Below are positions 17,975 to 43,844 of a DNA stretch of 64,000 bases, in pieces (the first letter of the stretch is position 1; each line of letters starts with the position of its first letter). The stretch is from positions 1-64,000 of IMG/VR virus record IMGVR_UViG_3300044701_000569. One strand, written 5' to 3'. A program made the translations under genes and the position numbers. The notes beneath the pieces were generated by a model. The model ran no database searches, was not told where the DNA came from, and saw only the letters and a list, made by a program, of their open reading frames with translations.

Positions 17975-18042
17975 TGGTTGACAGCGCCTGCAGAGGTGCT
18001 ATACTAAGAACATAGGGCAAACAAACAGAGAGGGCAAAGCAA

Positions 18043-18683: not shown

Positions 18684-18738
18684 CAGCAGAGCTAGATCGT
18701 GTATAATAGTGAAACATTCAACAGAAAGGGCAAAGGGC

Positions 18739-19761
18739 ATGAGTAAGACAATCCGTTTTATCGAAGGTACGTATAAGATTCGCGGCAACGACACTTCAGT
18801 TGCTGGATTGGTATTTCCTCTAGTAGAGGAATTCAAGGTAGGTACGGGCGGTGGCTACGTCACAGTGGATGGTAGTTCTGTGGCAGGCTTCCCGGATCGC
18901 AACATTAAGATCCGTTGCGAAGGTGCCGAGTCATACGAAACAGTGGACTCGAAGGTAGCCACCGCCCAGGCCAAGAGCCGTGTTGAGACTGATGAGCAGA
19001 TCATTGAACGACTGCGCGATCGTTTCAGCATGCTGGAGGAGATGACCAAAGCCTGTAAGAAGGGCGATGTGCGAGCTATGATCGTATCAGGTCCTCCGGG
19101 CGTTGGTAAGAGTCACGGTGTTGAGAAGGTGTTGGGCAAGCACGACCTGCTCGCTGACATCGCTAACGACTCAAAGTTCAAGAAGTACGAAGTGGTCAAG
19201 GGTGCTATGAGCGCCATTGGACTCTACTGCAAGCTGTTTCAGTATGCGGACAAGGATAACGTTATCGTGTTCGATGACTGCGATAGTGTGCTGTTGGACG
19301 ACCTCAGCTTGAACATTCTCAAGGCTGCTCTAGACTCTAAGAAGTCGCGTCGCATTCACTGGAACACCGACAGCTATAAACTGCGCAACGAAGGTGTGCC
19401 GGACAGCTTCGAGTTCAAGGGCTCAGCTATCTTTATCACCAACATCAAGTTCGATAACGTTAAGAGCAAGAAGCTCCGTGATCACCTTGAAGCTCTTGAG
19501 AGCCGTTGCCACTACATTGACCTGACCATTGATACAGAGCGTGAGAAGATGCTCCGCATCAAGCAGATCACTAAAGACGGCATGCTCTCTGAGTACGGCC
19601 TTAGTGAGGAAGTCCAAGACGAAATTGTGGACTTCATCGATCTTAACAAGAAGCGACTACGGGAACTGTCATTGCGTACAGTACTAAAGGTTGCCGATCT
19701 AGCCAAAGCATTCCCCTCTAAGTGGGAAGCTATGGCGGAGAATACTGTGATGAAGCGGTAA
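18739..19761 (+). CDS. AAA+ family ATPase
   Basis: Walker A GPPGVGKS, Walker B VIVFDDCD, sensor IFITN, ALESR arginine finger; leader AAAGGGCAAAGGGCATG. Confidence 0.85.
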   Translation: MSKTIRFIEGTYKIRGNDTSVAGLVFPLVEEFKVGTGGGYVTVDGSSVAGFPDRNIKIRCEGAESYETVDSKVATAQAKSRVETDEQIIERLRDRFSMLEEMTKACKKGDVRAMIVSGPPGVGKSHGVEKVLGKHDLLADIANDSKFKKYEVVKGAMSAIGLYCKLFQYADKDNVIVFDDCDSVLLDDLSLNILKAALDSKKSRRIHWNTDSYKLRNEGVPDSFEFKGSAIFITNIKFDNVKSKKLRDHLEALESRCHYIDLTIDTEREKMLRIKQITKDGMLSEYGLSEEVQDEIVDFIDLNKKRLRELSLRTVLKVADLAKAFPSKWEAMAENTVMKR

Positions 19762-19906
19762 GCCCTCCCGCTCACAGTACGGGCTCAGCAAGCCCTAGGA
19801 CATGCCCTCGTCCACCCGCTGAGCCCTAAAGAGCAGACAATCGTGTGCCCTCACGCTCTGCTCTTTGCGCCCGGACAGTGTGCCCTCGCTGTCCGGGTAT
19901 TTTTTT
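19743..19906 (+). ncRNA. Candidate four-hairpin structured RNA with GCCCU(C) loops, ending in an intrinsic terminator
   Basis: Stems 19743-19779, 19781-19826, 19828-19866, 19869-19898, each with a GCCCU-containing loop; T-run at 19900-19906. Confidence 0.7.
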
Positions 19907-19914
19907 CTCTGCAA

Positions 19915-19950
19915 AATCAATGACTTACAGCATAGGCTAAGTCATTGAAA
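19915..19950. promoter_or_regulatory. Inverted pair of IHF-like sites
   Basis: AATCAATGACTTA 19915-19927 and TAAGTCATTGAAA 19938-19950. Confidence 0.6.
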
Positions 19951-20040
19951 TCATTGAGGATTTTTTCTAAAAAAAGTGGTTGACATTTGGGCGCACCCGT
20001 GTATAATAAGAACATAGGGCAAACAAGAGGAGCAGCGTAC

Positions 20041-20232
20041 ATGGGCTACAGGATCATCAACGTTACACCAGAGTTCCGCGCACAATGGGAACCCAGAGTA
20101 GGTTTGGAAGGTCCGTTCTTCTACGAAGGCAACCGTGTGCTCTACTATGATGCCCGCGAAGGCAAGTACCTTAATCCCCAGACAGATATGTACCTCACCT
20201 ACGAAGAGTATGATGAGATCGCAAAGCAATAA
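20041..20232 (+). CDS. Early hypothetical protein
   Basis: GLEGPF...VLYYD.REGKY motif; own promoter. Confidence 0.75.
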   Translation: MGYRIINVTPEFRAQWEPRVGLEGPFFYEGNRVLYYDAREGKYLNPQTDMYLTYEEYDEIAKQ

Positions 20233-20301
20233 AAGTGGTTGACACGGATCCAAAACCGTGTATAATAAGAACATAGGGCAAACAAACAAGAGGGCAAACA
20301 A

Positions 20302-20637
20302 ATGGCAATGATCGTAATCCGCACCCAGTACATGGAAAACTATGGCGCCCACGATTGGGACGGCACTGGTGAGTGCCCGCAGTACTGGAAGTTCAAGGGC
20401 GGCTCGGAGTACAAGATCACCAACATCGACATCAACGGTGATCTGCAGGCTGCGGTGCGAGCTGCGGCTGTGGAACGCGACAACGACTACTGCCGCGAAT
20501 ACATCCTGGATTGGAGTGTGGAGGGGGACGACTACCTCAGCCAGTTCGAGCGTCAACAGCTGGAGTACGAGGGCAAGATTGACTGCCTTGAGCCCACTAT
20601 GGGCTATCGTGAGCTGCTGGAGACTCAGCCCGCATAA
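20302..20637 (+). CDS. Early hypothetical protein
   Basis: TQYMENYGAHDWDG.GECPQYWKFKGG; own promoter. Confidence 0.8.
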   Translation: MAMIVIRTQYMENYGAHDWDGTGECPQYWKFKGGSEYKITNIDINGDLQAAVRAAAVERDNDYCREYILDWSVEGDDYLSQFERQQLEYEGKIDCLEPTMGYRELLETQPA

Positions 20638-20709
20638 AAAGAATTGGTTGACAGGAACCCAAAATCCTGTATAATAAGAACATAGGGCAACAGAACAGAG
20701 GAGCACAGT

Positions 20710-21105
20710 ATGGATTGGGACAACATGATCAACACGCAAGAGGGATTGGCTCGCATGGTGGGCAAGACCTTTGTGAGCGTGAGCGGTGGCCGAGGCGACG
20801 GCGAGATGGAGTTCCGTACTGCTGACGGTGAGATCTTCCTGTTCAGCCACTACCAGGACTGCTGCGAATCCGTTAGTATCGAGGACGTCTGCGGTGACAT
20901 CCGGGACTTGGTGGGCGAGCCCATCCTCCTAGCTGAAGAAGTGTCGGGAGAAGCTCCTGCATCCGATGAGGATCACTGGGGCTCACAGACCTGGACCTTC
21001 TACAAGTTCGCTACCCGCAAGGGCTATGTGGACGTTCGCTGGCTGGGTGAATCCAACGGATATTACTCAGAGTCAGTGGATATGTACTATCAGGGTGTGG
21101 CATAA
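20710..21105 (+). CDS. Early hypothetical protein
   Basis: HYQDCCESV, WTFYKFATRKGYV.VRW.G.SNGYYSE. Confidence 0.8.
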   Translation: MDWDNMINTQEGLARMVGKTFVSVSGGRGDGEMEFRTADGEIFLFSHYQDCCESVSIEDVCGDIRDLVGEPILLAEEVSGEAPASDEDHWGSQTWTFYKFATRKGYVDVRWLGESNGYYSESVDMYYQGVA

Positions 21106-21183
21106 AAGCCACACCAAAAGTGGTTGACAGATTGGCACTAGGTGCTATACTAAGAACATAGGGCAAACAGAAAGGGCAATTAA

Positions 21184-21435
21184 ATGGACAAAGAACAGTT
21201 TGAACGTGATCCCCGGGACTATGCGCTGGACATGGTCAATGAGGGAATGGTCGATCCTATGCTGCTGCTCCAAGCAGCTCTGAATTGGATGAGCCACGAT
21301 GAGGTCCGCGAGATGTTGGACGCTAACGAACTCAGCCCGCGCTTCTCAGAGGATGAAGACGATGAGGATGAGGACGAAGAGTGGACTCCGGACAATGCAG
21401 ACTTCAACGATCCCGGCTCACGCCACCACTACTAA
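21184..21435 (+). CDS. Highly acidic early protein
   Basis: Own promoter; D/E tract. Confidence 0.75.
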   Translation: MDKEQFERDPRDYALDMVNEGMVDPMLLLQAALNWMSHDEVREMLDANELSPRFSEDEDDEDEDEEWTPDNADFNDPGSRHHY

Positions 21436-21441
21436 GGAGCG

Positions 21442-21669
21442 ATGATGATTAGAGAGCATATTCAAATGGAAACACGCCACGGCAGTCCTTATGATCGTGG
21501 TTCAGCAGACTCATACTACCGCAGGAAGCGCAGTCCTCACTACTATGTGGGCGACACTGGTACTTCAGAGCGTGTCACCCTCAAGGACATGACACCCGAT
21601 GAGGTCGAAGCCTATCACGCAGGCTACGATGACAACGAAGAAGCTGACAACCACAAGGAGTGGTTGTGA
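21442..21669 (+). CDS. Early hypothetical protein
   Basis: AAGGAG SD; RHGSPYDRGSADSYY motif. Confidence 0.75.
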   Translation: MMIREHIQMETRHGSPYDRGSADSYYRRKRSPHYYVGDTGTSERVTLKDMTPDEVEAYHAGYDDNEEADNHKEWL

Positions 21670-21773
21670 TGACTAGATTCGCAGAGTTCATCCTAGCTAC
21701 CTTTGCGGGTAGGATCGTACTGTTTGGAATGATTGTGGCCAGTCTTTGGACCTATCGTCTAATTTCTGGTTGA
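21669..21773 (+). CDS. Single-TM micro-protein (34 aa, not in ORF track)
   Basis: MTRFAEFILATFAGRIVLFGMIVASLWTYRLISG; stop inside the next TTGACA. Confidence 0.5.
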   Translation: MTRFAEFILATFAGRIVLFGMIVASLWTYRLISG

Positions 21774-21830
21774 CAAGAGTTCAAAAGGTGCTATACTAAG
21801 AACATAGGGCAAACACAAAGGGCAAACACC

Positions 21831-22157
21831 ATGCAAGACATTTTCAGCTTCATCGAAGACACCAATGACCAACTGCGCCGCTTGGTGCATGAAATGGAAT
21901 ACGTCCCTGCGGACAGCCTGGGCTTGGATCGTCGTGCCGCTTACCGCCTGTGGGTCAACGACGACTGCATCATCGTTGACAAGGGCAACGACCGCACCCT
22001 GCAGTACTACGGTGGGTTCGAGTATGTGGACAAGGAGTACCGCATTGAGATGGGTGACTATGTGATCTACCTCTCAGATGACGATCGTGTACAGGGACAC
22101 ATTGACACCCACTATCAGCGCGATGAAGAGGGTGTTTACACGGACGAAGACGCTTAA
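21831..22157 (+). CDS. Early acidic hypothetical protein
   Basis: Own promoter plus leader. Confidence 0.75.
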   Translation: MQDIFSFIEDTNDQLRRLVHEMEYVPADSLGLDRRAAYRLWVNDDCIIVDKGNDRTLQYYGGFEYVDKEYRIEMGDYVIYLSDDDRVQGHIDTHYQRDEEGVYTDEDA

Positions 22158-22169
22158 CCAAGGAACGAT

Positions 22170-22433
22170 ATGAATACAGTGATGATGACAATGGTGCGCC
22201 CCACGGTGCTGTTTGATGTGCTGAATCCACAGCACCGTGAGTGGGCCTATCAGTTCTTAGAACAGAAGAGCTGGCGTGACTGCCCAGTGATGTTCGCTCT
22301 CCCCCAAAGCGAGCCCTCGGTGTACACCATGATCACACGTGAGCTGAGCCACTATTACCTAAAGCAGGAGTTCCAACAGAAGCCCTGCCCTGTTGTAAAA
22401 ATACAACAGAAGTTTAAGGTAAAAAATGGTTGA
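22170..22433 (+). CDS. Hypothetical protein
   Basis: AAGGA SD; stop inside the next TTGACA. Confidence 0.65.
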   Translation: MNTVMMTMVRPTVLFDVLNPQHREWAYQFLEQKSWRDCPVMFALPQSEPSVYTMITRELSHYYLKQEFQQKPCPVVKIQQKFKVKNG

Positions 22434-22504
22434 CAGGGTTCCAAAATCCTGTATAATTAAGATGTAGGGCAAAAAAACTGTAACACGTAACACTAGGGGG
22501 CTAT

Positions 22505-22888
22505 ATGACAAAAGTAAATTATGACCGTTTCGCCAGCTTCGATCTCAACGAGTGCTGTGACTACTTTGACTCAGAGAAGCAGAGCAACTGGAAGAAGATC
22601 GGCAAGTTCATCGTAGCCGATGGACAGGAGTACGTAGAGGTCATGGAGCAAGAGTTTGACTTTGAGGACACTACAGACTCAGAGTACTCAGCATTTGAAG
22701 CGGGCGTCAAGTATGCGCTCACCAAGATGAACATTGCCCTGGAGGCCGCGGGCATAGACGTACAGGTCTGCGAAGTGGACCTCGTAGAGAGCATGGGCTT
22801 TATGATGGTGCGTTGCGATGACGAGCCCGAGGACTTTGTAAAGCGAGCTCTCAAGAAGCCCGTGCCCCAGGTAGAGAGCTGGGTCTAA
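22505..22888 (+). CDS. Early acidic hypothetical protein
   Basis: Own promoter. Confidence 0.75.
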   Translation: MTKVNYDRFASFDLNECCDYFDSEKQSNWKKIGKFIVADGQEYVEVMEQEFDFEDTTDSEYSAFEAGVKYALTKMNIALEAAGIDVQVCEVDLVESMGFMMVRCDDEPEDFVKRALKKPVPQVESWV

Positions 22889-22988
22889 GAGCCCGGGGTG
22901 TGGCATAAAAGCCACACCAAAAGTGGTTGACAGGAACCCAAAATCCTGTATAATAAGATACATAGGGCAAACACAAAGGGCAAAGCAA

Positions 22989-23261
22989 ATGAACATTTCC
23001 ACTCTTGAGCAGTACGTAGATCAGAAGAACCGCTGGGGCGCAATCTTTGGCTCCAAACCGTTGAGTCTGCTGAACAGCCAGGACCGCCAGGCTATCGCAG
23101 ACTCACTGGACTCAGACCTAAGCCCAGAGAATGTGAGCTGTGACGGAGAGATCCAAGGACGAGCTCTGATCCAGAAGCGCAACTATCTGATCCGTGCCGC
23201 ACGTGAACTCCACAGCATTGACCCTTCAGTTCGTATGTACGAAGCTGAGGGTTGGTTCTAA
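22989..23261 (+). CDS. Early hypothetical protein
   Basis: LSPENVSCDGE motif; own promoter. Confidence 0.75.
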   Translation: MNISTLEQYVDQKNRWGAIFGSKPLSLLNSQDRQAIADSLDSDLSPENVSCDGEIQGRALIQKRNYLIRAARELHSIDPSVRMYEAEGWF

Positions 23262-23339
23262 CTAGGGGTTGACACGAGTCCAAACTCGTGTATAATTAGA
23301 ACTGTAGGGCAAACAAACACACACGAAAGGGCAAACACT

Positions 23340-23669
23340 ATGATTACAGCACAGCAGATTGAGCAGGGCATCACGCTCGCACAGCAGGCTTCACAGCAGT
23401 TCTTCCAGCAGAAGCTGGGTGGACAGGACCAGTACGCCTGTGGCTTTGCTTGGGTAGATGTGTACGTGGATCGCACTAACTCTAAGCAGGCCAAGGAACT
23501 CTTAGCCGCAGGCTTCCGCAAGGACTACAAGCCCAAGTGCCTCTCAATGTGGAACCCAGGTGGCTTGGGTGTGCAGAACGTGGACACCAAAGAAGCGGGT
23601 GCGGACGCTATGGCACAGTACCTCAGAGCACTGGGCTTGAATGCCTACGCAGGCTCACGCTTAGATTAA
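23340..23669 (+). CDS. Early hypothetical protein
   Basis: ACGFAWV...Q....KEAGA.A.A..L...G..AY..SRLD. Confidence 0.8.
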   Translation: MITAQQIEQGITLAQQASQQFFQQKLGGQDQYACGFAWVDVYVDRTNSKQAKELLAAGFRKDYKPKCLSMWNPGGLGVQNVDTKEAGADAMAQYLRALGLNAYAGSRLD

Positions 23670-23710
23670 AAAAAGACGCACTCTCTGCAACACGCCTGAG
23701 AGTCCCTCTT

Positions 23711-23741
23711 CCCCGATCGGCAACGGTCGGGGTTTCTTTTT
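23711..23741 (+). terminator. Intrinsic terminator closing the early island
   Basis: CCCCGATCG-GCAA-CGGTCGGGG followed by TTTCTTTTT. Confidence 0.85.
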
Positions 23742-23997
23742 GAAAAAATTTTTGAGACGAGGGGTGAGGGGTATACAAATTTATTTGTTGCGCAAAAGCC
23801 ACAATGCTTAATGACCTCTTTCTCTCTACAATTCTCTACAATTCTCTCCGTTTTCTAACCACGCTTTTAAAAATTGGGTGATGCAGAATCACCACCTCAC
23901 TTCTATAAGTACTTCCCTATAAAAAAATGCGCGGCAATTTTTTTTGGGCTAGTACCCCATTTCGGGTAACTATATATAATAACAACTGCTCTACACT

Positions 23998-24210
23998 ATG
24001 ATTCGACACTACTGCGTATACACACAGGATCCACTGTTTCACACAGTGCTGAAGTTTCTATGCTTGCACGATCTCACTCGCACAGTGCATCTTAATCGCA
24101 CACGCTTTTGGATTGATGATGAGTTACCTCTACACTCAGAACTAGTACTGCGTTTTTGCTCCAGCATAGTGTGCATAGACTGTGAACAGGATCACGCACT
24201 GGGCGTTTAG
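23998..24210 (+). CDS. Small hypothetical protein
   Basis: ORF track. Confidence 0.55.
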   Translation: MIRHYCVYTQDPLFHTVLKFLCLHDLTRTVHLNRTRFWIDDELPLHSELVLRFCSSIVCIDCEQDHALGV

Positions 24211-31900: not shown

Positions 31901-33337
31901 TTATTCAGTACCTAAATTGTTTAGGAATTGTCGCAGTTTAGTTGAATCAGTCTCTGCTCGAATTTTGCCTAGTCCTGATCCTTCTGTAGGATCTTCTCTA
32001 GGTGTGTCGGGTGCAGTAGGCGTAGAACTACGCTTGAGTGCATTTACAATAGAACTAGCAGAAGAAGCCCCTGCACTAGCATAGCCTGAATCTTCCTGTT
32101 CTTCGCAATCAGTAATCCTCAGTGTGTCAATATTAAATTCTAGATCAACCTTCATGCCCACACCTGAACTCGAACGTGTCTTCATCAGCTGTAGTTGATA
32201 TCGTCCACGCTCACGCATAGCTCGCGATGTAAAGATACCAAACACGTTATCCGCTGTTTGAATCTTACTCAAACCGCCTGAAATGTGACTGTGATCAAAT
32301 TCAATCTCTTCCACTGACGCTCTGTTCAACTGACTTGCTGTAACAAATACTGTATTCAATTCCATGGCTAAGTTACGCAGTTCTTCACTCACATACTTGT
32401 CTTTGATAAACAGATTTTCTGCACTGACCTTAACTGAACTAGGCATCATAAGATCCAAATAGTCAATCAACAGTACATCAACTCTGCGTCCTGTTTTAAT
32501 TTCATATTCTTTTACAAAGGATCTTAGATCATTAGCAGTCTTACCTGTGGGCATATACTTGACCTGTAGTGCGCCACTCTTCTTGCCAATCATTCTTACT
32601 TTAAGTTCAACGTCGTCAATGCTCTTAAAAACTTCTCTAGTAGGAATCTCTGTAACCATTGAGTCTATACGCATACTAACTAGATTCTCTGAAAGCTCAA
32701 AAGTTAGATACAATACGTTAAGTCCTTGCAGTGCCCAGTTAACACCTAGGTTAGCCAAGAACAATGATTTACCTGCACCTGATCCGCCTGCAAAGATATT
32801 CAACTCACCTCTGTTGAATCCACCAAACAGTTTCTTGTCAAGGCTGGCCCAGCCTGTGCTAACCTGTCCGTTCTTGTCTTTGATAGCTTCTAGTCTTAGT
32901 CTAGGATTAGCAAAGTAATCTGTGCCTAGATCTTTTTGAAGTCCAATCTGTACAGCTCGCTTAACTAGGTCTTCTACAGGACCGTACTCGCCTTTTTCTA
33001 GTAGGTCTGCGCTCTTTAGGATCGCTGCCTCTAGAGCCTTGTGTCTAGCAAATGTTTCAAATTCTAGTAGTAGCCAATCATAGTGTTCTTCTCTTAGATC
33101 GCCAGGACTTTTTAGATCTCCTTTGGCTGCTGCGTTCACCATGTCAAGTGTAGGCATGGTATTGTGATCTGTTACGTAGTCGTTGATAAATTTTGCCGCA
33201 GACTGTAGTCTTCTATCAAAGTACTCAGGAAGAAACACAGTTTGACAGCGCACAAAAGACTCTGCATCTGTGAGCATCATTTCTAGATATACCTTCTGTA
33301 TATCATATCCGTAGTCTGTGTTTTGTCTTGTAGTCAT
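31901..33337 (-). CDS. Replicative DnaB-like helicase (T4 gp41-like)
   Basis: Walker A GGSGAGKS, LTFELSE, IDYLDLM, TASQLNR, KTR. Confidence 0.92.
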   Translation of the reverse strand: MTTRQNTDYGYDIQKVYLEMMLTDAESFVRCQTVFLPEYFDRRLQSAAKFINDYVTDHNTMPTLDMVNAAAKGDLKSPGDLREEHYDWLLLEFETFARHKALEAAILKSADLLEKGEYGPVEDLVKRAVQIGLQKDLGTDYFANPRLRLEAIKDKNGQVSTGWASLDKKLFGGFNRGELNIFAGGSGAGKSLFLANLGVNWALQGLNVLYLTFELSENLVSMRIDSMVTEIPTREVFKSIDDVELKVRMIGKKSGALQVKYMPTGKTANDLRSFVKEYEIKTGRRVDVLLIDYLDLMMPSSVKVSAENLFIKDKYVSEELRNLAMELNTVFVTASQLNRASVEEIEFDHSHISGGLSKIQTADNVFGIFTSRAMRERGRYQLQLMKTRSSSGVGMKVDLEFNIDTLRITDCEEQEDSGYASAGASSASSIVNALKRSSTPTAPDTPREDPTEGSGLGKIRAETDSTKLRQFLNNLGTE

Positions 33338-33345: not shown

Positions 33346-34329
33346 TTATACCTTCTTATACCATGCTTTGTCAATGTTATCTATTCGCTGACGTGTTTGC
33401 GCCAATACTCCGCCTACACAGCTACCAGGATCTCCAGGATTTGGCGGCACCCAAACTGTCTGCCATTGATTCCTGATAAGATCCACAGCCTGTTTATTAA
33501 GGGCACCGCCTCCGGCAAGTGCTAAATGATCCATGCCCGTCTGCACTTTAGTCCATATGCTTAGAGTTGCAAGACAGTATTCAAACACTGCCTGTGTAGC
33601 TGCTGCAATGTCATAAAGATCCTGCCTTGATGACAGTTCAGGATGCCACCATTTGCACCCTCTATGCAGATTTTCTCGCATACGTATTTGCTGAGGTTTT
33701 GATTTAGTATGATCAACGTCTATAAGTTCTTTACGTATTAAATGCGATAGACGACCGGGATCTCCCATTTGAGCAGATCGTACAACTAGGTATTCGTCGC
33801 GCTGCGGTACTAGACCTATACGCTGTGTCATAGCACTATAGAAAAGTCCAAGGCTGTGTGGATAGCTCTGACTGTGTATCTTGTGCATACGACCGTTTTC
33901 ACATGCCCAAATAGTAAGACACTCAAACTCTCCAATACTATCTAAACAGATTACAGCACAACGATCATGAGGTTGTGTATAATAAGCATAAGCAGCATGG
34001 CTGGTATGATGCTGTGTATACTTGATAGGAACATGACCTAGATAACTGCAGGCATTTGAAACATACTGCTTGATGTTATTTTCTTTTAGAAGCCAACCTT
34101 GTCCTGCCCAGTACTGTCTAAGTGTTTTTAAAAACGGACGTTCATACCAGACCAATTGATCAGGCATACCCCTTTGCGTCTGAGCCCATTCTATCAAACC
34201 CCAATTAATATCAGGATCATGGTGTATGCCAGAAAACTCTTTAGCTAGTGCAGCACTTACTAATTCGTTATTGTCAAAAATTGCTAGGCTGGCATCATGA
34301 CTGTTTCCTACTAGTCCCCAAGTAATCAT
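33346..34329 (-). CDS. Carbamoyltransferase (NodU/CmcH) N-terminal Kae1-like domain only
   Basis: SHDAS, HHTSHAAYAY, D.IGE, SLGLFYS, AGG.ALN, P.PGD.GS; ends at 327 aa. Confidence 0.8.
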   Translation of the reverse strand: MITWGLVGNSHDASLAIFDNNELVSAALAKEFSGIHHDPDINWGLIEWAQTQRGMPDQLVWYERPFLKTLRQYWAGQGWLLKENNIKQYVSNACSYLGHVPIKYTQHHTSHAAYAYYTQPHDRCAVICLDSIGEFECLTIWACENGRMHKIHSQSYPHSLGLFYSAMTQRIGLVPQRDEYLVVRSAQMGDPGRLSHLIRKELIDVDHTKSKPQQIRMRENLHRGCKWWHPELSSRQDLYDIAAATQAVFEYCLATLSIWTKVQTGMDHLALAGGGALNKQAVDLIRNQWQTVWVPPNPGDPGSCVGGVLAQTRQRIDNIDKAWYKKV

Positions 34330-34448
34330 TTGTATATAAAAGGATCCTGTTCACGTAACTTCTTAAGTTTCTTTTTAAATTCTATCTCATCTCTAATTCT
34401 GTAATAAGGCCACAGAAAAAAGTCTCTAATTTTTTTTAACCAAACCAT
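34326..34448 (-). CDS. 40-aa basic micro-protein ending DPFIYK
   Basis: Fills the gap between primase and carbamoyltransferase with overlapping start/stop. Confidence 0.5.
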   Translation of the reverse strand: MVWLKKIRDFFLWPYYRIRDEIEFKKKLKKLREQDPFIYK

Positions 34449-35419
34449 TTTTTTGCTCCTAATCTAATTTTTAAGGGCGACGATTCCACTGCCCCTACAA
34501 TAGAGTGTAAAGCATACAGCTTTCCGTATTTCTTTACAGCATCGCTGATATCTTTTATATCTTGTTCCCACTTAGGAAAGCTAACACTCCATCCTAGTTC
34601 AATTGCTCGTTCAACTAATTTTGAACCCGCAGCGTCTCTATCTGGAACAACTATTACTTCTCTATTTAATCTATTAATTAGCAGCGCCTGTTGATCTTTG
34701 ATTTCACTGCCCATTAGTGCTACACCGTCTACGTGAATAGCATCAATTGGTCCTTCACAGACTATTACAAATATCTTTTGATATCTTTGCTCATCTAGAT
34801 TAAAAACATAACCTGGTTGTTGTTCGCTAAGATACTTTGGTTGCTTGTCCTTCTGTACAGTTCTAGCAGTCCACCCTACAACTTTACCTTCGTAATAGAA
34901 CGGCACTATTAGTCTGTCTCTATAGCCAAGACTTGGACTCCAATAGAACGGATAGTCTTCAAGATAGAGATTTCTAGATCTCATATACTCAACTACCTGT
35001 TCTAAATGTTTGGTCATATATTCAACACCGTTGATCAGTACAGCATCTTCAGGCAAAGGAACTTCGTTGAATACGGGTATTTCTATTAGACGCTGTTGAA
35101 CTTCAATACCTTCGTTCTCTTGCATTACCTGCAGAGAAATCTTATTGATTAAGTCATCAGGAACATTAATCCAACGCATGAGTTTGCGCATGCCTTTGGA
35201 TACATTGCGTCCAGGTTGCCAACTAGCTTTGAATCCGCAGTTGAAGCAGTGATAGGATATACCTCCGTCACCGTTCGATATCAGTCCGCCGCGCTGTCTT
35301 GTATCTGCTGATTGTCCGTTGTGATGGCAGCAGGGTGCATTGAAGCTGGTCCAGCCGCTCGGCGTGCTCTTCCGCTTAGGCGGAAGATAGGTTAGCAATG
35401 TGTCAGCGACTATACTCAT
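34436..35419 (-). CDS. DNA primase (T4 gp61-like)
   Basis: Zn motif CCHH...HCFNC; TOPRIM CEGPIDA and PDRD; TTGACA-17-TATACT promoter upstream. Confidence 0.88.
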   Translation of the reverse strand: MSIVADTLLTYLPPKRKSTPSGWTSFNAPCCHHNGQSADTRQRGGLISNGDGGISYHCFNCGFKASWQPGRNVSKGMRKLMRWINVPDDLINKISLQVMQENEGIEVQQRLIEIPVFNEVPLPEDAVLINGVEYMTKHLEQVVEYMRSRNLYLEDYPFYWSPSLGYRDRLIVPFYYEGKVVGWTARTVQKDKQPKYLSEQQPGYVFNLDEQRYQKIFVIVCEGPIDAIHVDGVALMGSEIKDQQALLINRLNREVIVVPDRDAAGSKLVERAIELGWSVSFPKWEQDIKDISDAVKKYGKLYALHSIVGAVESSPLKIRLGAKKWFG

Positions 35420-36251: not shown

Positions 36252-36620
36252 ATGTTAACAAAAGATATAGAAGAAAATTTTCCGTTTTTAAGCGTTGTAT
36301 CCTACGGAGGCAGCGAATACATTGGCATCATCTCTAACCAGGATCAGCACGTCACTAGCATGTACATATATACAAATTTACGTACAGATAGTGATAAGCA
36401 ATCGTTTTTAGATTTAGGTGATGTTTGGTGGTGGGAATCAAACAGACTAATTCCTATTAATATATTTTTAAAGGGCGAATTTGATAGATTTCGCTACTGT
36501 ATTATGACTATGAACACTAAAGATGTGATAGTTTCAATAGGACCAACTGTTAATCTTAACAATCTAGCACTAAAGAGGGTAAAAAGGAAGAACGTACAGC
36601 TAATTAGAAAAGTTAGATAG
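36252..36620 (+). CDS. Hypothetical protein
   Basis: WWWESNR.IPINIFL motif. Confidence 0.7.
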   Translation: MLTKDIEENFPFLSVVSYGGSEYIGIISNQDQHVTSMYIYTNLRTDSDKQSFLDLGDVWWWESNRLIPINIFLKGEFDRFRYCIMTMNTKDVIVSIGPTVNLNNLALKRVKRKNVQLIRKVR

Positions 36621-37185
36621 TTTCAGCAGAACTAGCAATTTTTTCACAGAGCAAGTTCATATGCACTATTACAGCGACAGCATATGACACAGCGTGAGCT
36701 TTCTTAAAGTAGTATTCACCGTCCTCGGGCTTCTTCCAAATACTGCTCATTATCGTCGTCCAACTCTCCCCAATCAAATGTCTCTTTGCTGGGCGTATCA
36801 TTGCTAAGACAGCAGCTAATTCTTCCACGGAAGAAGGGCAAGTCTTCCTCAGAATTGCACCATGGCCATTCAAATGAAATAACTGATTTACAAATTGATC
36901 GTGTTGTAAAAGTTCCCATACTGGTTCAGTCTCCATAAGTTTGTTTAAGTGATGTTCGTCACGTATGTCTTTATATATGCTGACGTTTAGAAAATCTATC
37001 TTAAAGTAGCCGCGTTCTTCTGCTTCTTTATAATCAATAGTAGATATGTTGTTAATTGGATTATGAGGGATCTCAGTAACATATATCCCTGTATTATGTT
37101 TTTTATTATCCTCAAGACGTGCGATACGATGCTGAAGTTTATTCAGCACTGTATCTCTATCAGCAAAGTCTATATCAATGTCCAT
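36613..37185 (-). CDS. Miniature DNA polymerase III alpha (DnaE)-like protein
   Basis: DIDIDF, HNTGIY, FKIDFLN, LA.IRP, FKKAHAVSYA in only 190 aa. Confidence 0.75.
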   Translation of the reverse strand: MDIDIDFADRDTVLNKLQHRIARLEDNKKHNTGIYVTEIPHNPINNISTIDYKEAEERGYFKIDFLNVSIYKDIRDEHHLNKLMETEPVWELLQHDQFVNQLFHLNGHGAILRKTCPSSVEELAAVLAMIRPAKRHLIGESWTTIMSSIWKKPEDGEYYFKKAHAVSYAVAVIVHMNLLCEKIASSAETI

Positions 37186-37678
37186 TAGTTAGTTTTTCAA
37201 TCTTTTTTCGTTTGCGTTGAGCCATGTCCCATTTAAGAGAACTTACTCTATCTTTCATAGTAATGCCTAGTAGATGATCTAATTCATGTAGATAACACTT
37301 TGCACTATAGCCTTCAATCTTGACTACTTTTTCTTCAAGATTCTCATCATAAAATTTTGCTAGTATTTCTTTAGGACGTTTTATTTTTACAAAGACATTT
37401 GGAAAACTTAAACAGCCTTCTATGTCATCTTGTGTTTCTGTTGTATACTGTAACACTGTGGGATTAATGCACATTGTTGAATTTTCAACACTATCTCCCA
37501 TTACAAAGACTTTAATATTTAGCCCAACTTGATTAGCACTTAGTCCTATGCCGCCACCTGACAGCATAAAGTCTACCATTTGCGTTTTGAGTTCTTTAGG
37601 ATCAAAACCAGGATTTTCAAGATCTACATCTTTACACTCTGTCTCTAATCCATCATTTGGATGTGTAACTAATTTCAT
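37175..37678 (-). CDS. def: Peptide deformylase
   Basis: GIGLSANQV, EGCLS, HELDHL. Confidence 0.95.
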   Translation of the reverse strand: MKLVTHPNDGLETECKDVDLENPGFDPKELKTQMVDFMLSGGGIGLSANQVGLNIKVFVMGDSVENSTMCINPTVLQYTTETQDDIEGCLSFPNVFVKIKRPKEILAKFYDENLEEKVVKIEGYSAKCYLHELDHLLGITMKDRVSSLKWDMAQRKRKKIEKLTNGH

Positions 37679-37687: not shown

Positions 37688-38377
37688 TTATAGATTACTT
37701 TCTTTAACAACTTCTTTTACTAGTTCAACGTCAGCAGTTTGTCTTTTAAATCTTATAGCCCAGTGTTCTGGATTAATAACTTGATAGACCATATTCAACT
37801 GTTCGTCATTAAACTTGCTTAACATTTCTTTGCCGCTCTTACAGTTAAGTATAAGCCATGGACTTATCTTTCCGTCTCGAATATGCCATACTGCTCTGTT
37901 GAGACTTACATAACTGAAATAATGATTCCATGTACTACTATTTTCTTCAGCCCATTCCATCATTGTAGTAACGGAACGTTCTAGTGCTGTAGTAACATCT
38001 TCCTTAAGAATAAACTGTAGTGCATACTGCTCATACATTTCATTCCTACACCAATGATCTAATTTAACTCCTGACTTTACAACATAATCAATATACTTTT
38101 CAGGATATAACGGTCGCACGTTGGAGACAAACGATCCAAACTTTACAAATGCATTATAATAAGGTGACTTGCAAAACTCTTCGTAAGTTTTGTCTTTTTT
38201 AGCACCCGCACTTAATTTGTAAAATCTGTTAAATGCATAAAATCCGTACTGCACTCTCTTTTCAGTTTTTTGAAGTGCTCGTCTCTTTTGTTCACACATG
38301 TGAACAGCTAGGGTTTTTTCTTTGGTATACCCCGAATTGCAATACTCACAAACGTATGGCTTATCAGAAATCTGCAT
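37688..38377 (-). CDS. Hypothetical protein with N-terminal zinc finger
   Basis: YVCEYC...TLAVHMC. Confidence 0.7.
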   Translation of the reverse strand: MQISDKPYVCEYCNSGYTKEKTLAVHMCEQKRRALQKTEKRVQYGFYAFNRFYKLSAGAKKDKTYEEFCKSPYYNAFVKFGSFVSNVRPLYPEKYIDYVVKSGVKLDHWCRNEMYEQYALQFILKEDVTTALERSVTTMMEWAEENSSTWNHYFSYVSLNRAVWHIRDGKISPWLILNCKSGKEMLSKFNDEQLNMVYQVINPEHWAIRFKRQTADVELVKEVVKESNL

Positions 38378-38822
38378 CTTCGATACTATGTTCTCTAGCC
38401 AATTCTTTGAGTTCTTTTTTTGTAGATATTCTAGCAAGTAGTTCAACCTCATCAAGTTTCATTGTAGGATATATGGACTGTAGAAACTTAACTGCCTTTG
38501 AGTTAGCAGAGCCTTTCTGTTTAAAACCAATCCATTGATGACTTTCAATTTTTTTAGTATTGCCGGCTTGGCATAATAATTGCCATTGCAACTTAGGATG
38601 CTTGGTTCCTAAAACATTCCAATTTTTATTGTAGTACTCATTAGTTTTGAATACAGCTAATTCTTGTTTTTCTCGAGAACCTTGAACACTGCTAACCCAT
38701 CGGTTAAGTAACCAAAAGCTAACCTGTTTCTTTTCTTCGGGGGACAGTTCATCCCACACTGAGATTGCTCCCATATCAACAGCAGCTAATAGGTCTTTTA
38801 TAGGAAGTTTTTCTTGTGCCAT
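38364..38822 (-). CDS. Possible clamp-loader small subunit (gp62-like)
   Basis: Size, LLNRWVS...N...H.KLQW.LL...H.WI pattern and replication context. Confidence 0.5.
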   Translation of the reverse strand: MAQEKLPIKDLLAAVDMGAISVWDELSPEEKKQVSFWLLNRWVSSVQGSREKQELAVFKTNEYYNKNWNVLGTKHPKLQWQLLCQAGNTKKIESHQWIGFKQKGSANSKAVKFLQSIYPTMKLDEVELLARISTKKELKELAREHSIEDADF

Positions 38823-39472
38823 TCTTCTAAATCCGCAGGTGTGTTAATTTCAATTCCGTCAAAGTCTACTTCAGTTACTGCTATTTTAACATCATTTTGT
38901 AGCCAACGCAACTGTTCTAATTTCTCTATTTCTTCTTCCAGAAAAGACTTTGCCGTTGTCCACATTATTTTGGACTCTCTATTGTAGCCATAAATTCCTA
39001 AATGATGGTCGCCATACAAAAGTGGTGCCCTACAAAACCAATGTGCTCTGCCTCTTGAATGAATCATCTTAACAGCATTTGGATCTTGTCGCTTATTAAT
39101 ATCCATATGAGTATATGCTGTAGCTACATCTGCCTTTTGTAGTGCTCGTTCTACTGAGCGAATAATATCTACGGTAATGTCAGGCATGTCACCTTGAACA
39201 TTAATGTACCTATCGTATTGTAAATGTTCGTCAATTACTTCCATACAACGACTAGTTCCGCAATCATGATCTACCTTTGATAGTATTACATGAGGACTGG
39301 GTATCTGTTCTGCAATACGCTCGTCATCTGTAAGAACGTAGGTGTCTAACCCTGTTTCTTTACAACGATAAAATACTCGCTGTATTAGAGGAACGCCATT
39401 TAACTTTGCAAGGGGTTTACCTTCAAATCGTTGACTACCGTATCTTGCAGGAATTAAGATAGCAGTTGTCAT
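38798..39472 (-). CDS. kdsB: CMP-Kdo synthetase (3-deoxy-manno-octulosonate cytidylyltransferase)
   Basis: IPARYGSQRFEGKPL, GTSR, INVQGD, HLGIYGY, EKLEQLR, INTPADL. Confidence 0.92.
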   Translation of the reverse strand: MTTAILIPARYGSQRFEGKPLAKLNGVPLIQRVFYRCKETGLDTYVLTDDERIAEQIPSPHVILSKVDHDCGTSRCMEVIDEHLQYDRYINVQGDMPDITVDIIRSVERALQKADVATAYTHMDINKRQDPNAVKMIHSRGRAHWFCRAPLLYGDHHLGIYGYNRESKIMWTTAKSFLEEEIEKLEQLRWLQNDVKIAVTEVDFDGIEINTPADLEEWHKKNFL

Positions 39473-40119: not shown

Positions 40120-40899
40120 TTAATTTCCTTCATACTGATATTTTACGATGTCGCTAACAATCTTTTCAAAGTCGTTTAAATGAATCATATTTGGACCGTC
40201 TGACGGAGCATTGTTGGGGTCGGGATGAACTTCTAAAAAGAAGTTTTTTACACCTAAGGCACTAGCAGCCCTAGTAAGGCCAGCAACATATTCGCGGTTC
40301 CCGCCAGAACTATGGCCTTGACCACCTGGCTTCTGAACTGAGTGGGTGGCATCAAATATGATAGGACAACTATAGCTGTTAAGCATATAATCCAACCCAG
40401 TAAAATCAACAACCAGAGCATTATATCCAAAGCTAGTTCCCCTTTCTGTTATCCAAACTTCTTTAGCATCTGTAGTCTTACTTAAGATACCCTTGATATC
40501 CCAAGGAGCGAGAAATTGACCTTTTTTTATGTTTACTATTTTACCTGTCTGACAGGCCTCTATAATTAAATCTGTTTGTCTACACAAAAATGCAGGTATT
40601 TGTAAAACGTCAATTGCATCTGAGTAGGTTGCAGTTAACGCTCTAATCTGTTGAACAGAGTGTACGTCTGTTAGTGTTTTTAAACCTTTAATAGACTTTT
40701 TCAACTTTGAAAAGTCTGACATTGTCTCAGCTAACCCAATACCGCGGATACCGTTTGCACTAGTTCGATTGGCTTTATCGTAACTGGCTTTGAAATAATA
40801 TTCAATGCCCCATGCACGACAGATATCATTACAGTGCGATGCAATTTTAAATGAATGCTCAAGGGTTTCGTGTTGGCAGGGTCCTGCTATTATCCTCAT
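40120..40899 (-). CDS. kdsA: Kdo-8-phosphate synthase
   Basis: IAGPC, KASYDKANRTS, QIPAFLCRQTDL, KKGQF, ERG.SFGY, DATHSVQ, SDGPN. Confidence 0.95.
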   Translation of the reverse strand: MRIIAGPCQHETLEHSFKIASHCNDICRAWGIEYYFKASYDKANRTSANGIRGIGLAETMSDFSKLKKSIKGLKTLTDVHSVQQIRALTATYSDAIDVLQIPAFLCRQTDLIIEACQTGKIVNIKKGQFLAPWDIKGILSKTTDAKEVWITERGTSFGYNALVVDFTGLDYMLNSYSCPIIFDATHSVQKPGGQGHSSGGNREYVAGLTRAASALGVKNFFLEVHPDPNNAPSDGPNMIHLNDFEKIVSDIVKYQYEGN

Positions 40900-42380: not shown

Positions 42381-43844
42381 TTAGTTCCAATCAACTTTTT
42401 CTAATGTAAAGGGGTATTGAGCCTCCTTATAAAACTTCTTACGTTGTGTAAGATGTCGCTTTGCATATTTGCAAGTACTTGTGATATCCCAAATCTGTAC
42501 AAAGTCTTTGTCTTTTGCTTTTCGTACTCCGCGTCCAATACTTTGAATAACACGGACAAAACTCTTTCCGGGTTCAATAAGAACTAAATTAAAAATACGA
42601 GGAATATTAATACCAACAGCAGCAACACCATAAGTTGCGATGATGACATTATTTGTTGCGTCTTGTATTTCGTCGTATGATTCTTTTCTGTCTTTTACCT
42701 TAACTGATCCGTTAATGAAAACAGAGTCCGGAATAAGGCTTTGGAGTTTTTCGCCTGCACTAATTCTATCAACTAAAATTAGAGTGTTGCCTGATTGCTT
42801 TACTGTGTTTAAAAGTTTGCCTAGATAATCTAATCGCTTTTCATCAGTTACTAGATATTTTAGTTCCGATTGATAATCTCTAAATTCTGGTAGGTCTAAT
42901 AGCTGCACTACGTTTACATGGCAGTCTGCTAGAACACCTCGGTCCTGCAATTCCTTAGCAGTAATTTGTCCTATTACTGGACCTATACTAGCATGCAGTG
43001 CTTCGTATTCAAATTTCTCTTTAGGAATAGTTCCTGTAAGTCCCCAGCGTATAGGAGCATTGCGTAGATTTCGTGTGAGTAGATTTTTTAAAACTTCGGC
43101 TTTGGCTTGGTGAACTTCGTCTACAATAACAGTTGATACACCTTCTAAAAATTCTGCTAGACTTAGTACAGCGCCGCCGTCTTTGAATTTCTTTTCGAGG
43201 ATGTTAAGACTTTGCCATGTACAGATAGTGTGTGTTTTGTTTAGTTCTTTCTTATCACCAAAGTATACGCCTACATCTAATCCGCAGTTGCGATAATCTT
43301 CTGCTGTTTGTTCTACTAGACTTTTGTTTGGTACTATAACAAGACTACGTCCATATTTCTCAGTTAAATGACTTAGTGTTGCTGTGGTAATAGTTTTGCC
43401 TGCACCAGTAGCAATCTGTTGCAATGATTGAGGATTTTCAAGGAAACTATTAACAGCTTCAACTTGATAATCTCTCAGCATAATAAGTTCACCTTCGGCT
43501 GGATGTCCTTTAGGCCAGCGAACATTTTGATCAGCCCAATAGGTTTCAGTAATTGGTTGAAACTCAAATTTAACATGAGATCTTTGATCTACTATATCAT
43601 CAATTGATACATTGTTTTTTGTAAGTATATCTACAACAACATCAAGGTGGTTAACGTAGCCTGTACCGCCAATACCAAAAAAAGCAACCTTACCATCCCA
43701 TCGGCCCAATTTATACTGAGGCATATACTTTGCGTAAGGCACTTCAAATTTGAGTGCATTGGATAGCTTACGTCGAACATCAACATCAAGCCCTTCTAGC
43801 TTGATATTAACTTCGTCTTCTATAATTAATCTACAACTGGTCAT
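42381..43844 (-). CDS. uvsW: UvsW-like superfamily 2 helicase
   Basis: RDYQ, ATGAGKT, DEVH, GLTGT, QSIGRGVR. Confidence 0.9.
   Translation of the reverse strand: MTSCRLIIEDEVNIKLEGLDVDVRRKLSNALKFEVPYAKYMPQYKLGRWDGKVAFFGIGGTGYVNHLDVVVDILTKNNVSIDDIVDQRSHVKFEFQPITETYWADQNVRWPKGHPAEGELIMLRDYQVEAVNSFLENPQSLQQIATGAGKTITTATLSHLTEKYGRSLVIVPNKSLVEQTAEDYRNCGLDVGVYFGDKKELNKTHTICTWQSLNILEKKFKDGGAVLSLAEFLEGVSTVIVDEVHQAKAEVLKNLLTRNLRNAPIRWGLTGTIPKEKFEYEALHASIGPVIGQITAKELQDRGVLADCHVNVVQLLDLPEFRDYQSELKYLVTDEKRLDYLGKLLNTVKQSGNTLILVDRISAGEKLQSLIPDSVFINGSVKVKDRKESYDEIQDATNNVIIATYGVAAVGINIPRIFNLVLIEPGKSFVRVIQSIGRGVRKAKDKDFVQIWDITSTCKYAKRHLTQRKKFYKEAQYPFTLEKVDWN

What the first reader, a model, noticed from the sequence alone, without database searches (positions are those of the whole stretch)
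36613..37185. 190-aa miniature DnaE retaining the catalytic aspartate motifs
Seen: DIDIDF (two catalytic Asp), H..G, KIDFL (third Asp), LA.IRP and FKKAHA.SYA appear in the same order as in DNA Pol III alpha but compressed into 190 aa, with no PHP or OB domain. The ORF is intact and sits near the primase and the putative clamp loader. Established: DnaE is over 1000 aa. Inference: a minimal nucleotidyltransferase or one piece of a split C-family polymerase whose other parts lie elsewhere.
Basis: partly seen in the sequence, partly recalled or inferred. Interest (0 to 1): 0.6.

Follow-up and report, generated by a model that had tools for sequence, protein, structure and literature searches.

The report
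Half of a two-piece mini DnaE polymerase
This intact 190-aa gene of a 358-kb freshwater jumbo phage is the catalytic-aspartate half of a two-piece, stripped-down DnaE-type DNA polymerase whose other half is encoded about 208 kb away; the arrangement was described by comparative genomics in 2021, and I found no biochemical test of it.

Summary
ORF 36613-37185(-) is intact, 190 aa, and carries the DnaE motifs in DnaE order, with no PHP, HhH or OB domain.

It is not a remnant. At least 7,975 database proteins of about 185-200 aa match it, the motif residues are invariant, and dN/dS is about 0.14. Independent metagenome assemblies carry it without indels.

It is not a whole enzyme either. It lacks the NTP-binding GRGS motif, which sits in a 173-aa ORF at genome position 244,540-245,061(-). 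That ORF matches Pfam PF07733 and ends seven DnaE positions before this ORF begins:
- Modelled N-half residues 60-173 align to E. coli DnaE 270-393 (Z 10.4).
- C-half residues 1-186 align to E. coli DnaE 401-784 (Z 9.0).

The break point is conserved in all 136 N-half and 71 C-half relatives examined. A complex prediction supports binding (0.91 against 0.00 for controls) and pairs the GRGS strand with the DIDIDF strand.

The genome also encodes a family B polymerase. Iyer et al. 2021 (PMC7824862) described exactly this split minimal Pol III alpha in group 2.2 jumbo phages, so the feature is real but already known. Its activity and role remain untested in the literature searched.

The parts
36613..37185 (-). 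C-terminal half (190 aa plus stop) of the split minimal DnaE-like polymerase, carrying the Mg2+-binding aspartates and a reduced fingers module
   Evidence: ORF. phrog_11778, E 6e-65. AF2 pLDDT 86.5. VIA-align to E. coli DnaE 401-784: Z 9.0, rmsd 4.1 A, 180 residues aligned. VIA-align to Mtb DnaE1: Z 9.3, rmsd 4.0 A, 188 aligned. dN/dS median 0.14.
37165..37182 (-). Residues 2-7, DIDIDF: the strand holding the first two catalytic aspartates (PDxDxDF motif of DnaE)
   Evidence: D2, D4 and D6 are invariant. Aligned to PDIDIDF of Mtb DnaE1. In the predicted complex this strand pairs with N-half residues 137-139.
37081..37101 (-).
   Evidence: K29, H30 and G33 are invariant; N31, T32 and Y35 are at least 90% conserved. 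Strand E33-35 in the model.
36985..37002 (-). Residues 62-67, KIDFLN: the strand holding the third catalytic aspartate
   Evidence: K62, D64, L66 and N67 are invariant. Aligned to KMDFL of Mtb DnaE1. Strand E63-67 in the model.
36781..36807 (-). Residues 127-135, LAMIRPAKR: fingers motif equivalent to (A)L(Y/F)RPG of DnaE
   Evidence: L127, I130, R131 and K134 are invariant. Aligned to IALYRP of Mtb DnaE1. Weak PF17657 finger match, E 0.06, below the cut-off.
36679..36714 (-). Residues 158-169, YYFKKAHAVSYA: fingers motif equivalent to (Y)(A/G)FNKSH of DnaE
   Evidence: Y158, F160, K161, H164 and Y168 are invariant. Aligned to YAFNKSHAAGY of Mtb DnaE1. Residues 161-174 touch the C-terminal helix of the N-half in the predicted complex.
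37175..37678 (-). Context: peptide deformylase gene whose last 11 nt overlap the start of the C-half gene (ATGGACATTGA), consistent with co-transcription
   Evidence: Present upstream in only 18 of 73 related loci, so it is not part of the conserved unit.
36252..36620 (+). Context: convergent 122-aa ORF of unknown function (phrog_11637) that overlaps the 3' end of the C-half gene by 8 nt. It is a conserved neighbour; its role is unknown.
   Evidence: A homolog lies on the opposite strand directly downstream in 70 of 73 related loci, median gap 6 nt, including Phosso and Paride.
34436..35419 (-). Context: DnaG-type primase
   Evidence: phrog_47, E 5e-40. The same order occurs in Phosso and Paride and in 57 of 73 loci.
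31901..33337 (-). Context: DnaB-like replicative helicase
   Evidence: phrog_19, E 4e-70.

Best explanation
The ORF encodes the C-terminal subunit of a two-subunit, minimal C-family (DnaE-like) polymerase of a freshwater jumbo phage.

Shown here:
- The DnaE palm is cut between its NTP-binding G-S motif and its DxD strand.
- The 173-aa N-half (genome 244,540-245,061, minus strand, about 208 kb away) supplies GVGRGSS and the first part of the palm.
- This 190-aa C-half supplies all three aspartates (D4 and D6 in DIDIDF, D64 in KIDFL) and a fingers module cut down to the RP(A)K and FKKAH motifs.
- Neither junction has room for an intein.

Inferred:
- The two proteins assemble non-covalently. The N-half strand at residues 137-139 pairs with the DIDIDF strand, so a single active site is built from two polypeptides.
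- The heterodimer catalyses template-directed dNTP addition, but without a PHP domain, thumb, clamp-binding, HhH or OB modules.
- Because the phage has a T4-like family B polymerase, the mini-enzyme is probably an accessory replisome polymerase rather than the main replicase. Its role could be extension of primase-made primers, synthesis of one strand, or gap filling and repair. The C-half gene lies in the primase-DnaB block and the N-half gene lies beside the clamp loader.
For: Family membership: phrog_11778 (E 6e-65) for the C-half and phrog_11127 (E 1.6e-44) for the N-half. The N-half matches PF07733 over the cut-off.

Structure:
- N-half residues 60-173 align to E. coli DnaE 270-393: Z 10.4, rmsd 3.3 A, 97 aligned.
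- N-half also aligns to Mtb DnaE1 303-413: Z 10.6, rmsd 2.7 A, 96 aligned.
- C-half residues 1-186 align to E. coli DnaE 401-784: Z 9.0.
- The two halves are therefore consecutive along DnaE.

Conservation of the split:
- In 136 of 136 complete N-half ORFs the stop comes 33-35 residues after GRGS.
- 71 of 71 C-halves start 1-8 residues before DxDxD, with an in-frame stop 0-37 codons upstream and no N-half within 3 kb.

Co-occurrence:
- The same phage genera carry both halves.
- Of 10 incomplete jumbo contigs that carry one half, 7 also carry the other, as a separate ORF far away.

Selection and conservation:
- dN/dS medians are 0.14 (C-half) and 0.18 (N-half).
- Catalytic and dNTP-binding residues are invariant.

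Complex prediction: score 0.91 in three runs against a best control of 0.00. That mark was reached by 58 of 80 solved complexes and 2 of 110 mismatched pairs. There were 152-155 contacts, the runs agreed in at least 96% of contacts, and partner pLDDT was at least 91. The counts hold only roughly because my own alignments were used.

Genome context:
- Family B polymerase at about 218.4-219.7 kb.
- No PHP or HhH domain anywhere.
- Clamp loader about 2.7 kb from the N-half gene here, and 0.7 kb from it in phage Paride.

Literature: the same conclusion was reached by comparative genomics in Iyer et al. 2021, PMC7824862.
Against: - No biochemical evidence exists, either here or in the searched literature, that the pair binds, polymerises DNA, or is needed for replication.
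- The complex score may only reflect the model's memory of intact DnaE structures. It shows likeness to an intramolecular interface, not binding.
- The thumb and much of the fingers, which hold primer-template DNA in DnaE, are missing, so template-directed synthesis is an assumption.
- Sequence similarity of the C-half to DnaE is marginal by itself (PDB profile E 0.08, Pfam finger E 0.06).
- The first ~60 residues of the N-half are poorly conserved and unexplained.
- RNA evidence is weak: two short contigs in one metatranscriptome, which could come from contaminating DNA.
Confidence: 0.8

Rival explanations
1. The two halves do assemble, but the enzyme is not a template-directed DNA polymerase. 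It would be a Pol-beta-fold nucleotidyltransferase with another job, such as template-independent tailing, making a nucleotide signal or counter-defence molecule, or adding or modifying nucleotides on DNA or RNA ends.
For: All DNA-holding accessory modules of DnaE are absent: thumb, most of the fingers, HhH, OB and the clamp-binding region. The phage already has a complete family B polymerase. The Pol-beta fold superfamily contains many non-polymerase transferases (established knowledge).
Against: The retained helical module is specifically the DnaE fingers, with its RP and (F)(N/K)K(S/A)H motifs invariant. Every structural match with Z of 5.8 or more is a C-family replicative polymerase, and no other NTase family appears. 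Both genes sit in replication gene blocks: primase-DnaB and the clamp loader.
Confidence: 0.13
2. The 190-aa protein is a self-sufficient minimal nucleotidyltransferase that works without a partner.
For: It carries all three catalytic aspartates and folds confidently alone (pLDDT 86.5).
Against: - It lacks the G-S NTP-binding motif that defines the Pol-beta-type fold. That motif is invariant in the separate N-half.
- The model of the C-half alone has only three strands of the palm sheet.
- The partner co-occurs with it and is under equal purifying selection.
- The predicted interface is large, at 152-155 contacts.
Confidence: 0.04
3. The ORF is a decayed fragment of a full-length dnaE, an assembly artefact, or a piece joined to its partner by a split intein, as in cyanobacterial DnaE.
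For: DnaE is normally over 1,000 aa. Cyanobacterial dnaE is naturally split and trans-spliced (literature listed).
Against: - At least 7,975 same-length homologs exist, and the break point is conserved.
- dN/dS is 0.14.
- Three independent DNA assemblies cover the ORF with no indels, and the two substitutions seen in near-identical strains (37075, 37156) fall on third codon positions.
- Pfam found no Hint or intein domain in either half at E up to 10.
- There is no room for intein fragments. The N-half ends 2 residues after the conserved EF (invariant E170 and F171), and the C-half starts 1 residue before DIDIDF.
Confidence: 0.02

Closest known systems
Split minimal DNA polymerase III alpha of group 2.2 jumbo phages (Iyer, Anantharaman, Krishnan, Burroughs, Aravind 2021, Viruses 13:63, PMC7824862); PHROG families phrog_11778 and phrog_11127
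   Same: It matches in every tested respect:
- two small proteins from distant genes
- an N-terminal NTP-binding part and a C-terminal Mg2+- and template-binding part
- no other Pol III domain
- a family B polymerase in the same genome
- a jumbo myophage-type genome related to RaK2, GAP32, PA5oct and Atu_ph07

   Different: Nothing essential differs. This copy comes from an uncultivated freshwater phage and is only 38-54% identical to the copies in isolates. Its two genes are about 208 kb apart, against about 34-44 kb in PA5oct and GAP32. Its start overlaps a peptide deformylase gene, which is not typical: 18 of 73 loci.
Bacterial DnaE (Pol III alpha; E. coli 2HNH, T. aquaticus 2HPI/3E0D, M. 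tuberculosis DnaE1 5LEW)
   Same: It has the same palm with three aspartates and a G-S motif, and the same order of fingers motifs. The two models together align to E. coli residues 270-784.
   Different: The phage enzyme totals 363 aa in two chains, against 1,160 aa in one chain. It has no PHP, thumb, beta-binding, HhH, OB or tau-binding parts. Only about 277 of the roughly 515 residues in that DnaE span have a structural counterpart.
Naturally split DnaE of cyanobacteria (Ssp/Npu DnaE split intein)
   Same: It is a dnaE gene in two pieces at distant loci.
   Different: The cyanobacterial halves are full-size, are split elsewhere in the protein, and are rejoined by protein trans-splicing (established knowledge). 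Here there is no intein, and the break lies inside the catalytic core between the G-S motif and DxD.
Firmicute DnaE beside PolC (two-polymerase replisome)
   Same: The analogy is functional only. A proofreading-deficient C-family enzyme works beside the main replicase and extends primers (established knowledge; used here as a lead, not tested).
   Different: Here the main polymerase is family B, not PolC, and nothing about hand-off has been tested.

Membership tests
Split minimal Pol III alpha of group 2.2 jumbo phages (Iyer et al. 2021) | [quoted passage not shown] | tested here: met
   The 173-aa ORF has PF07733 and GVGRGSS. The 190-aa ORF has DxDxD and KxDFL. The models abut on DnaE at residues 393 and 401.
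Split minimal Pol III alpha of group 2.2 jumbo phages (Iyer et al. 2021) | The two genes are distantly located in a jumbo phage genome | tested here: met
   The genes lie at 36.6-37.2 kb and 244.5-245.1 kb of a 357,559-bp virus record rated 100% complete.
Split minimal Pol III alpha of group 2.2 jumbo phages (Iyer et al. 2021) | No other Pol III alpha domain in the genome, and a family B DNA polymerase present | tested here: met
   PHP and HhH_6 are absent. phrog_405 hits only the two ORFs. PF00136 hit at E 5.7e-32 in a 908-aa frame. The OB domain was not searched for separately.
Split minimal Pol III alpha of group 2.2 jumbo phages (Iyer et al. 2021) | The halves reconstitute one enzyme | tested here: inconclusive
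   The prediction supports binding: 0.91 against 0.00 for controls. That mark was reached by 58 of 80 solved complexes and 2 of 110 mismatched pairs. This may be memory of intact DnaE structures. There is no experiment.
C-family DNA polymerase (DnaE/PolC) | Pol-beta-like palm with a G-S motif and three catalytic aspartates | tested here: met
   Met only by the two proteins together.
C-family DNA polymerase (DnaE/PolC) | N-terminal PHP domain | tested here: not met
   No PF02811 match at E up to 1 in the whole genome, while the search found it in 14 of 14 control genomes.
C-family DNA polymerase (DnaE/PolC) | Complete fingers domain (PF17657), thumb, beta-binding/HhH and OB modules in one chain of 900 aa or more | tested here: not met
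   PF17657 scores 12-13 bits against a cut-off of 22. PF14579 is absent. The 190 C-half residues span 384 residues of E. coli DnaE.
C-family DNA polymerase (DnaE/PolC) | Template-directed DNA synthesis | not testable with these tools
   Needs a primer-extension assay.
Intein-split DnaE (cyanobacterial type) | N- and C-intein fragments at the break | tested here: not met
   No Hint or intein family in either half at E up to 10. The conserved polymerase sequence runs to within 1-4 residues of both termini.

The most novel reading that the evidence does not exclude
The two-piece mini Pol III could be a true second replicative polymerase that divides labour with the family B enzyme, for example by taking over primase-made primers or synthesising one strand. 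If so, these very abundant phages would run a hybrid B-family plus C-family replisome, and the 363-aa pair would be the smallest working C-family polymerase core. It would serve as a living model of the ancestral enzyme, as Iyer et al. propose. The tightly linked convergent 122-aa ORF (phrog_11637) might be a further subunit.
Probability: 0.2. Interest if true: 0.75.

Novelty: already known. Interest (0 to 1): 0.38.

Why it matters
The feature is a striking piece of enzyme architecture. A replicative-polymerase active site is built from two small proteins encoded far apart, stripped of everything but the core. The family is also very large: at least 7,900 clusters at 90% identity for each half, found in metagenomes and in therapeutic-candidate phages such as PA5oct, Paride and RaK2-like phages.

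It bears on the origin of C-family polymerases and on how jumbo-phage replisomes are organised. However, it was recognised and published in 2021, and public annotation already calls these proteins DnaE-like. This window therefore adds only one more member, plus some quantitative support: the abutting structural alignment, the conserved break point, dN/dS, the complex prediction and the neighbour conservation. The open question is biochemical and can be tested with two small recombinant proteins.

Tried and rejected
- Megablast of 15 kb around the ORF against phage records found no match. Only protein-level relatives exist among isolates.
- Pfam on the C-half alone gave only a sub-threshold finger match, and the PDB profile search was marginal (E 0.08). 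The assignment therefore rests on PHROGs, structure and the partner.
- Foldseek on the N-half gave no hit at E up to 0.001. The second-look alignment was clear.
- The T4-type clamp family PF02916 found nothing, so the sliding clamp was not identified.
- Literature searches for 'split DnaE' returned only intein papers. The PA5oct omics paper does not mention the polymerase. The Sharanji paper only lists a 'DNA polymerase III DnaE' gene.
- Pfam and the protein atlas gave nothing for the conserved 122-aa neighbour.
- The pseudogene, assembly-artefact, stand-alone-enzyme and intein readings were considered and rejected; see the rival explanations.
- Not done, on the operators' advice: the exhaustive representative search. 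Fused forms of about 360 aa, or other length variants, are therefore not excluded. The word search sees only 0.55-1.75 times the query length.
- No phylogeny was built, so the question of ancestral versus reduced origin is untested.

Full report
**What is in the window**

The ORF at 36613-37185 on the minus strand is open and encodes 190 aa starting MDIDIDFADRD.

The window is the first 64 kb of a 357,559-bp IMG/VR virus record rated 100% complete. At protein level the closest cultured relatives are jumbo myophages:
- 53-54% identity: Sinorhizobium phage Phosso, Agrobacterium phage Atu_ph07, and the Pseudomonas PA5oct/Paride group.
- 38-42% identity: the GAP32, CBB, 121Q and RaK2-like phages.

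There is no nucleotide-level match to any phage record. The DNA occurs in freshwater and lake metagenomes from 13 studies.

**Is it real and under selection?**

The protein belongs to phrog_11778, annotated 'DNA polymerase' (E 6e-65, profile length 197). The word search found at least 7,975 proteins at E up to 0.001. The 120 listed are 185-202 aa long, although this search can only see 0.55-1.75 times the query length.

In 71 related viral loci the ORF starts 1-8 residues before DxDxD, and an in-frame stop lies 0-37 codons upstream. In an alignment reaching down to 46% identity, these residues are invariant: D2, D4, D6, R10, K29, H30, G33, K62, D64, R131, K134, K161, H164. Pairwise dN/dS (NG86, 0.05<dS<1) has a median of 0.14.

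Contigs from three independent DNA studies cover the ORF with no indels. The two differences from near-identical strains (37075, 37156) fall on third codon positions. One metatranscriptome has short contigs at 36579-36739 and 37169-37305, which is weak evidence of transcription because DNA carry-over cannot be excluded. The ORF is therefore neither a remnant nor an artefact.

**Relation to DnaE**

Sequence evidence for this half alone is thin:
- Pfam gives only a finger-domain match below threshold (E 0.06).
- phrog_405, a full-length DnaE family of 1,190 positions, matches at E 1.4e-7.
- A profile of homologs hits M. tuberculosis DnaE1 at E 0.08, but in three collinear pieces: PDIDIDFDDR, the KMDFL-to-LYRP stretch, and YAFNKSHAAGY.

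Structure settles it. The AF2 model (pLDDT 86.5) finds only Pol III alpha chains at the top of Foldseek (E 6e-4, probability 1.0). In the second-look alignment the results are:
- Mtb DnaE1: Z 9.3, rmsd 4.0 A, 188 aligned.
- E. coli DnaE residues 401-784: Z 9.0, rmsd 4.1 A, 180 aligned.
- All 14 best entries are C-family polymerases. The next unrelated hit has Z 3.6.

So 190 residues span 384 residues of DnaE. The thumb and much of the fingers are missing.

**The other half**

A search of the whole genome with PF07733 found one place, at 244.5 kb. The ORF there (G000:C1:244540-245061, minus strand, 173 aa, P0122) ends ...WGVGRGSSVASYVLYLIGVHRVNSINYNLDWREFLR. That is the G-S NTP-binding motif and the helix that precedes PDxDxDF in DnaE. 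It matches PF07733 over the cut-off (E 3.6e-9) and phrog_11127 (E 1.6e-44).

Residues 60-173 of its model align to E. coli DnaE 270-393 (Z 10.4, rmsd 3.3 A, 97 aligned) and to Mtb DnaE1 303-413 (Z 10.6, rmsd 2.7 A, 96 aligned). All matches with Z of 2 or more are again C-family polymerases. The two proteins are thus consecutive pieces of the DnaE palm and fingers, with the cut between E. coli positions 393 and 401, inside the catalytic core.

The cut is conserved. In 136 of 136 complete N-half ORFs from viral contigs the stop comes 33-35 residues after GRGS, and none of the 71 C-half loci has an N-half within 3 kb.

There is no intein. Pfam at E up to 10 shows none, and conserved polymerase sequence reaches both termini.

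The two families are about equally numerous (at least 7,905 N-half proteins) and occur in the same phage genera. Of ten incomplete metagenomic jumbo contigs (55-85% complete) holding one half, seven hold the other as a separate ORF far away. N-half dN/dS has a median of 0.18.

**Assembly**

The complex prediction supports binding. The score was 0.91 in each of three runs, against a best control of 0.00. There were 152-155 contacts, the runs agreed in at least 96% of contacts, and partner pLDDT was at least 91. The pass mark was reached by 58 of 80 solved complexes and by 2 of 110 mismatched pairs, although these counts hold only roughly because my own alignments were used.

The confident contacts include:
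- N-half 137-139 against C-half 5-7, placing the strand that leads into GRGS beside the DIDIDF strand.
- N-half 73-78 against C-half 36-39.
- N-half 164-173 against C-half 161-174.

This is what a once-continuous palm would look like, and for the same reason the score may reflect the model's memory of intact DnaE structures. It shows likeness, not binding.

**Genome context**

- The genome has no PHP or HhH_6 domain, and the full-length DnaE profile hits nothing beyond the two ORFs.
- It encodes a family B polymerase in a 908-aa frame at about 218.4-219.7 kb.
- An RFC/delta-prime-type clamp loader lies at about 241 kb, roughly 2.7 kb downstream of the N-half gene. The same linkage is seen in phage Paride.
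- The C-half gene lies in a conserved block: 255-aa phrog_11058 ORF, C-half, convergent 122-aa phrog_11637 ORF, virion protein, primase, DnaB.

**Mechanism**

Shown: a DnaE-type catalytic core divided between two conserved, co-occurring, selected proteins.

Inferred:
- The two proteins assemble non-covalently into one active site. The N-half binds the dNTP triphosphate. The C-half binds the metals through D4, D6 and D64 and contacts the template and nucleotide through the RP(A)K and FKKAH motifs.
- The pair performs templated DNA synthesis without proofreading.
- It has an accessory role beside the family B polymerase, such as primer extension, synthesis of one strand, or repair.

The residue roles are taken from established work on E. 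coli and T. aquaticus DnaE (Lamers et al. 2006, cited in PMC7824862) and were not tested here.

**Comparison with what is known**

Iyer et al. [quoted passage not shown] It is accompanied by a family B polymerase and lacks the other Pol III domains. They suggest it cooperates in synthesis of one strand or in repair, and that it models the ancestral enzyme. Every defining feature of that description was tested here and met.

GenBank records already label both halves 'DnaE-like DNA polymerase III alpha' or 'DNA polymerase'. Weinheimer and Aylward 2022 (PMC9123017) note PF07733 as the marker of one marine jumbo-phage cluster. I found no experimental study of the pair.

**Verdict**

The feature is real and remarkable as enzyme architecture, but it is already described. 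This copy is one more member, from an uncultivated freshwater phage.

Interest is moderate because the biochemistry is entirely open and easy to test. The costly representative search was not used, so longer or fused relatives are not excluded.

Noticed in passing
window 36252-36620 (+): A 122-aa ORF of unknown function (phrog_11637; no Pfam or atlas hit) converges on the C-half gene and overlaps its end by 8 nt. A homolog sits in the same position on the opposite strand in 70 of 73 related loci (median gap 6 nt), including the distant phages Phosso and Paride. It could be a functional partner or simply part of a syntenic core block.
   Followed up: partly
window 37688-38455 (-): A 255-aa ORF (phrog_11058, unknown function) has a C2H2-like zinc-finger motif near its N-terminus (weak PF12756, E 0.04). 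It is conserved upstream of the C-half gene in 70 of 73 related loci.
   Followed up: partly
window 37175-37678 (-): A peptide deformylase gene (phrog_2890, E 1.5e-35) has its last 11 nt overlapping the start codon region of the C-half gene. It is present at this position in only 18 of 73 relatives, so it is a clade-specific insertion of an auxiliary gene into the replication block.
   Followed up: partly
G000:C1:~240,900-241,800 (-), outside the window: An RFC/delta-prime-type clamp loader (PF13177, E 7.5e-12, 312-aa frame) lies about 2.7 kb downstream of the N-half gene. The same N-half to clamp loader linkage is seen in phage Paride. No T4-type sliding clamp (PF02916) was detected in the genome.
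   Followed up: partly
window ~10000-24000: This stretch has GC of 0.45-0.52 and positive GC and AT skews, against GC of 0.30-0.43 and negative skews in the rest of the window. It is filled with short ORFs (few over 250 aa) and carries tRNA-Met(CAT), tRNA-Leu(TAA) and tRNA-Arg(TCT) at 16545-16863.
   Followed up: no
window 33346-34329 (-), 38798-39472 (-), 40120-40899 (-): Auxiliary genes are interleaved with replication genes. One is a Nol-like carbamoyltransferase (phrog_1601). The other two look by eye like CMP-KDO synthetase (KdsB) and KDO-8-phosphate synthase (KdsA). This would point to a Gram-negative host and to phage tampering with LPS or sugar synthesis. The Kds assignments were not tested with a family scan.
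   Followed up: no
window 42381-43844 (-): A 487-aa superfamily-2 DNA helicase (phrog_16, E 2.8e-78) lies upstream of the block. A 'DNA helicase' holds the equivalent place in Paride.
   Followed up: no
PHROG profiles hit by P0001 and P0122: There are weak matches to other phage DnaE-like families of intermediate size: phrog_11165 (782 positions) and phrog_12219 (823), where both halves match one profile. There are also matches to phrog_13169 and phrog_7513 (about 460 positions), where the N-half region matches near the C-terminal end. These may be intermediate or differently split forms, useful for tracing how the minimal version arose.
   Followed up: no
L003 383-784 (-) = G000:C1:~243,407-243,808: A 133-aa ORF about 730 bp downstream of the N-half gene looks by eye like a GroES-type co-chaperonin. 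This was not tested.
   Followed up: no
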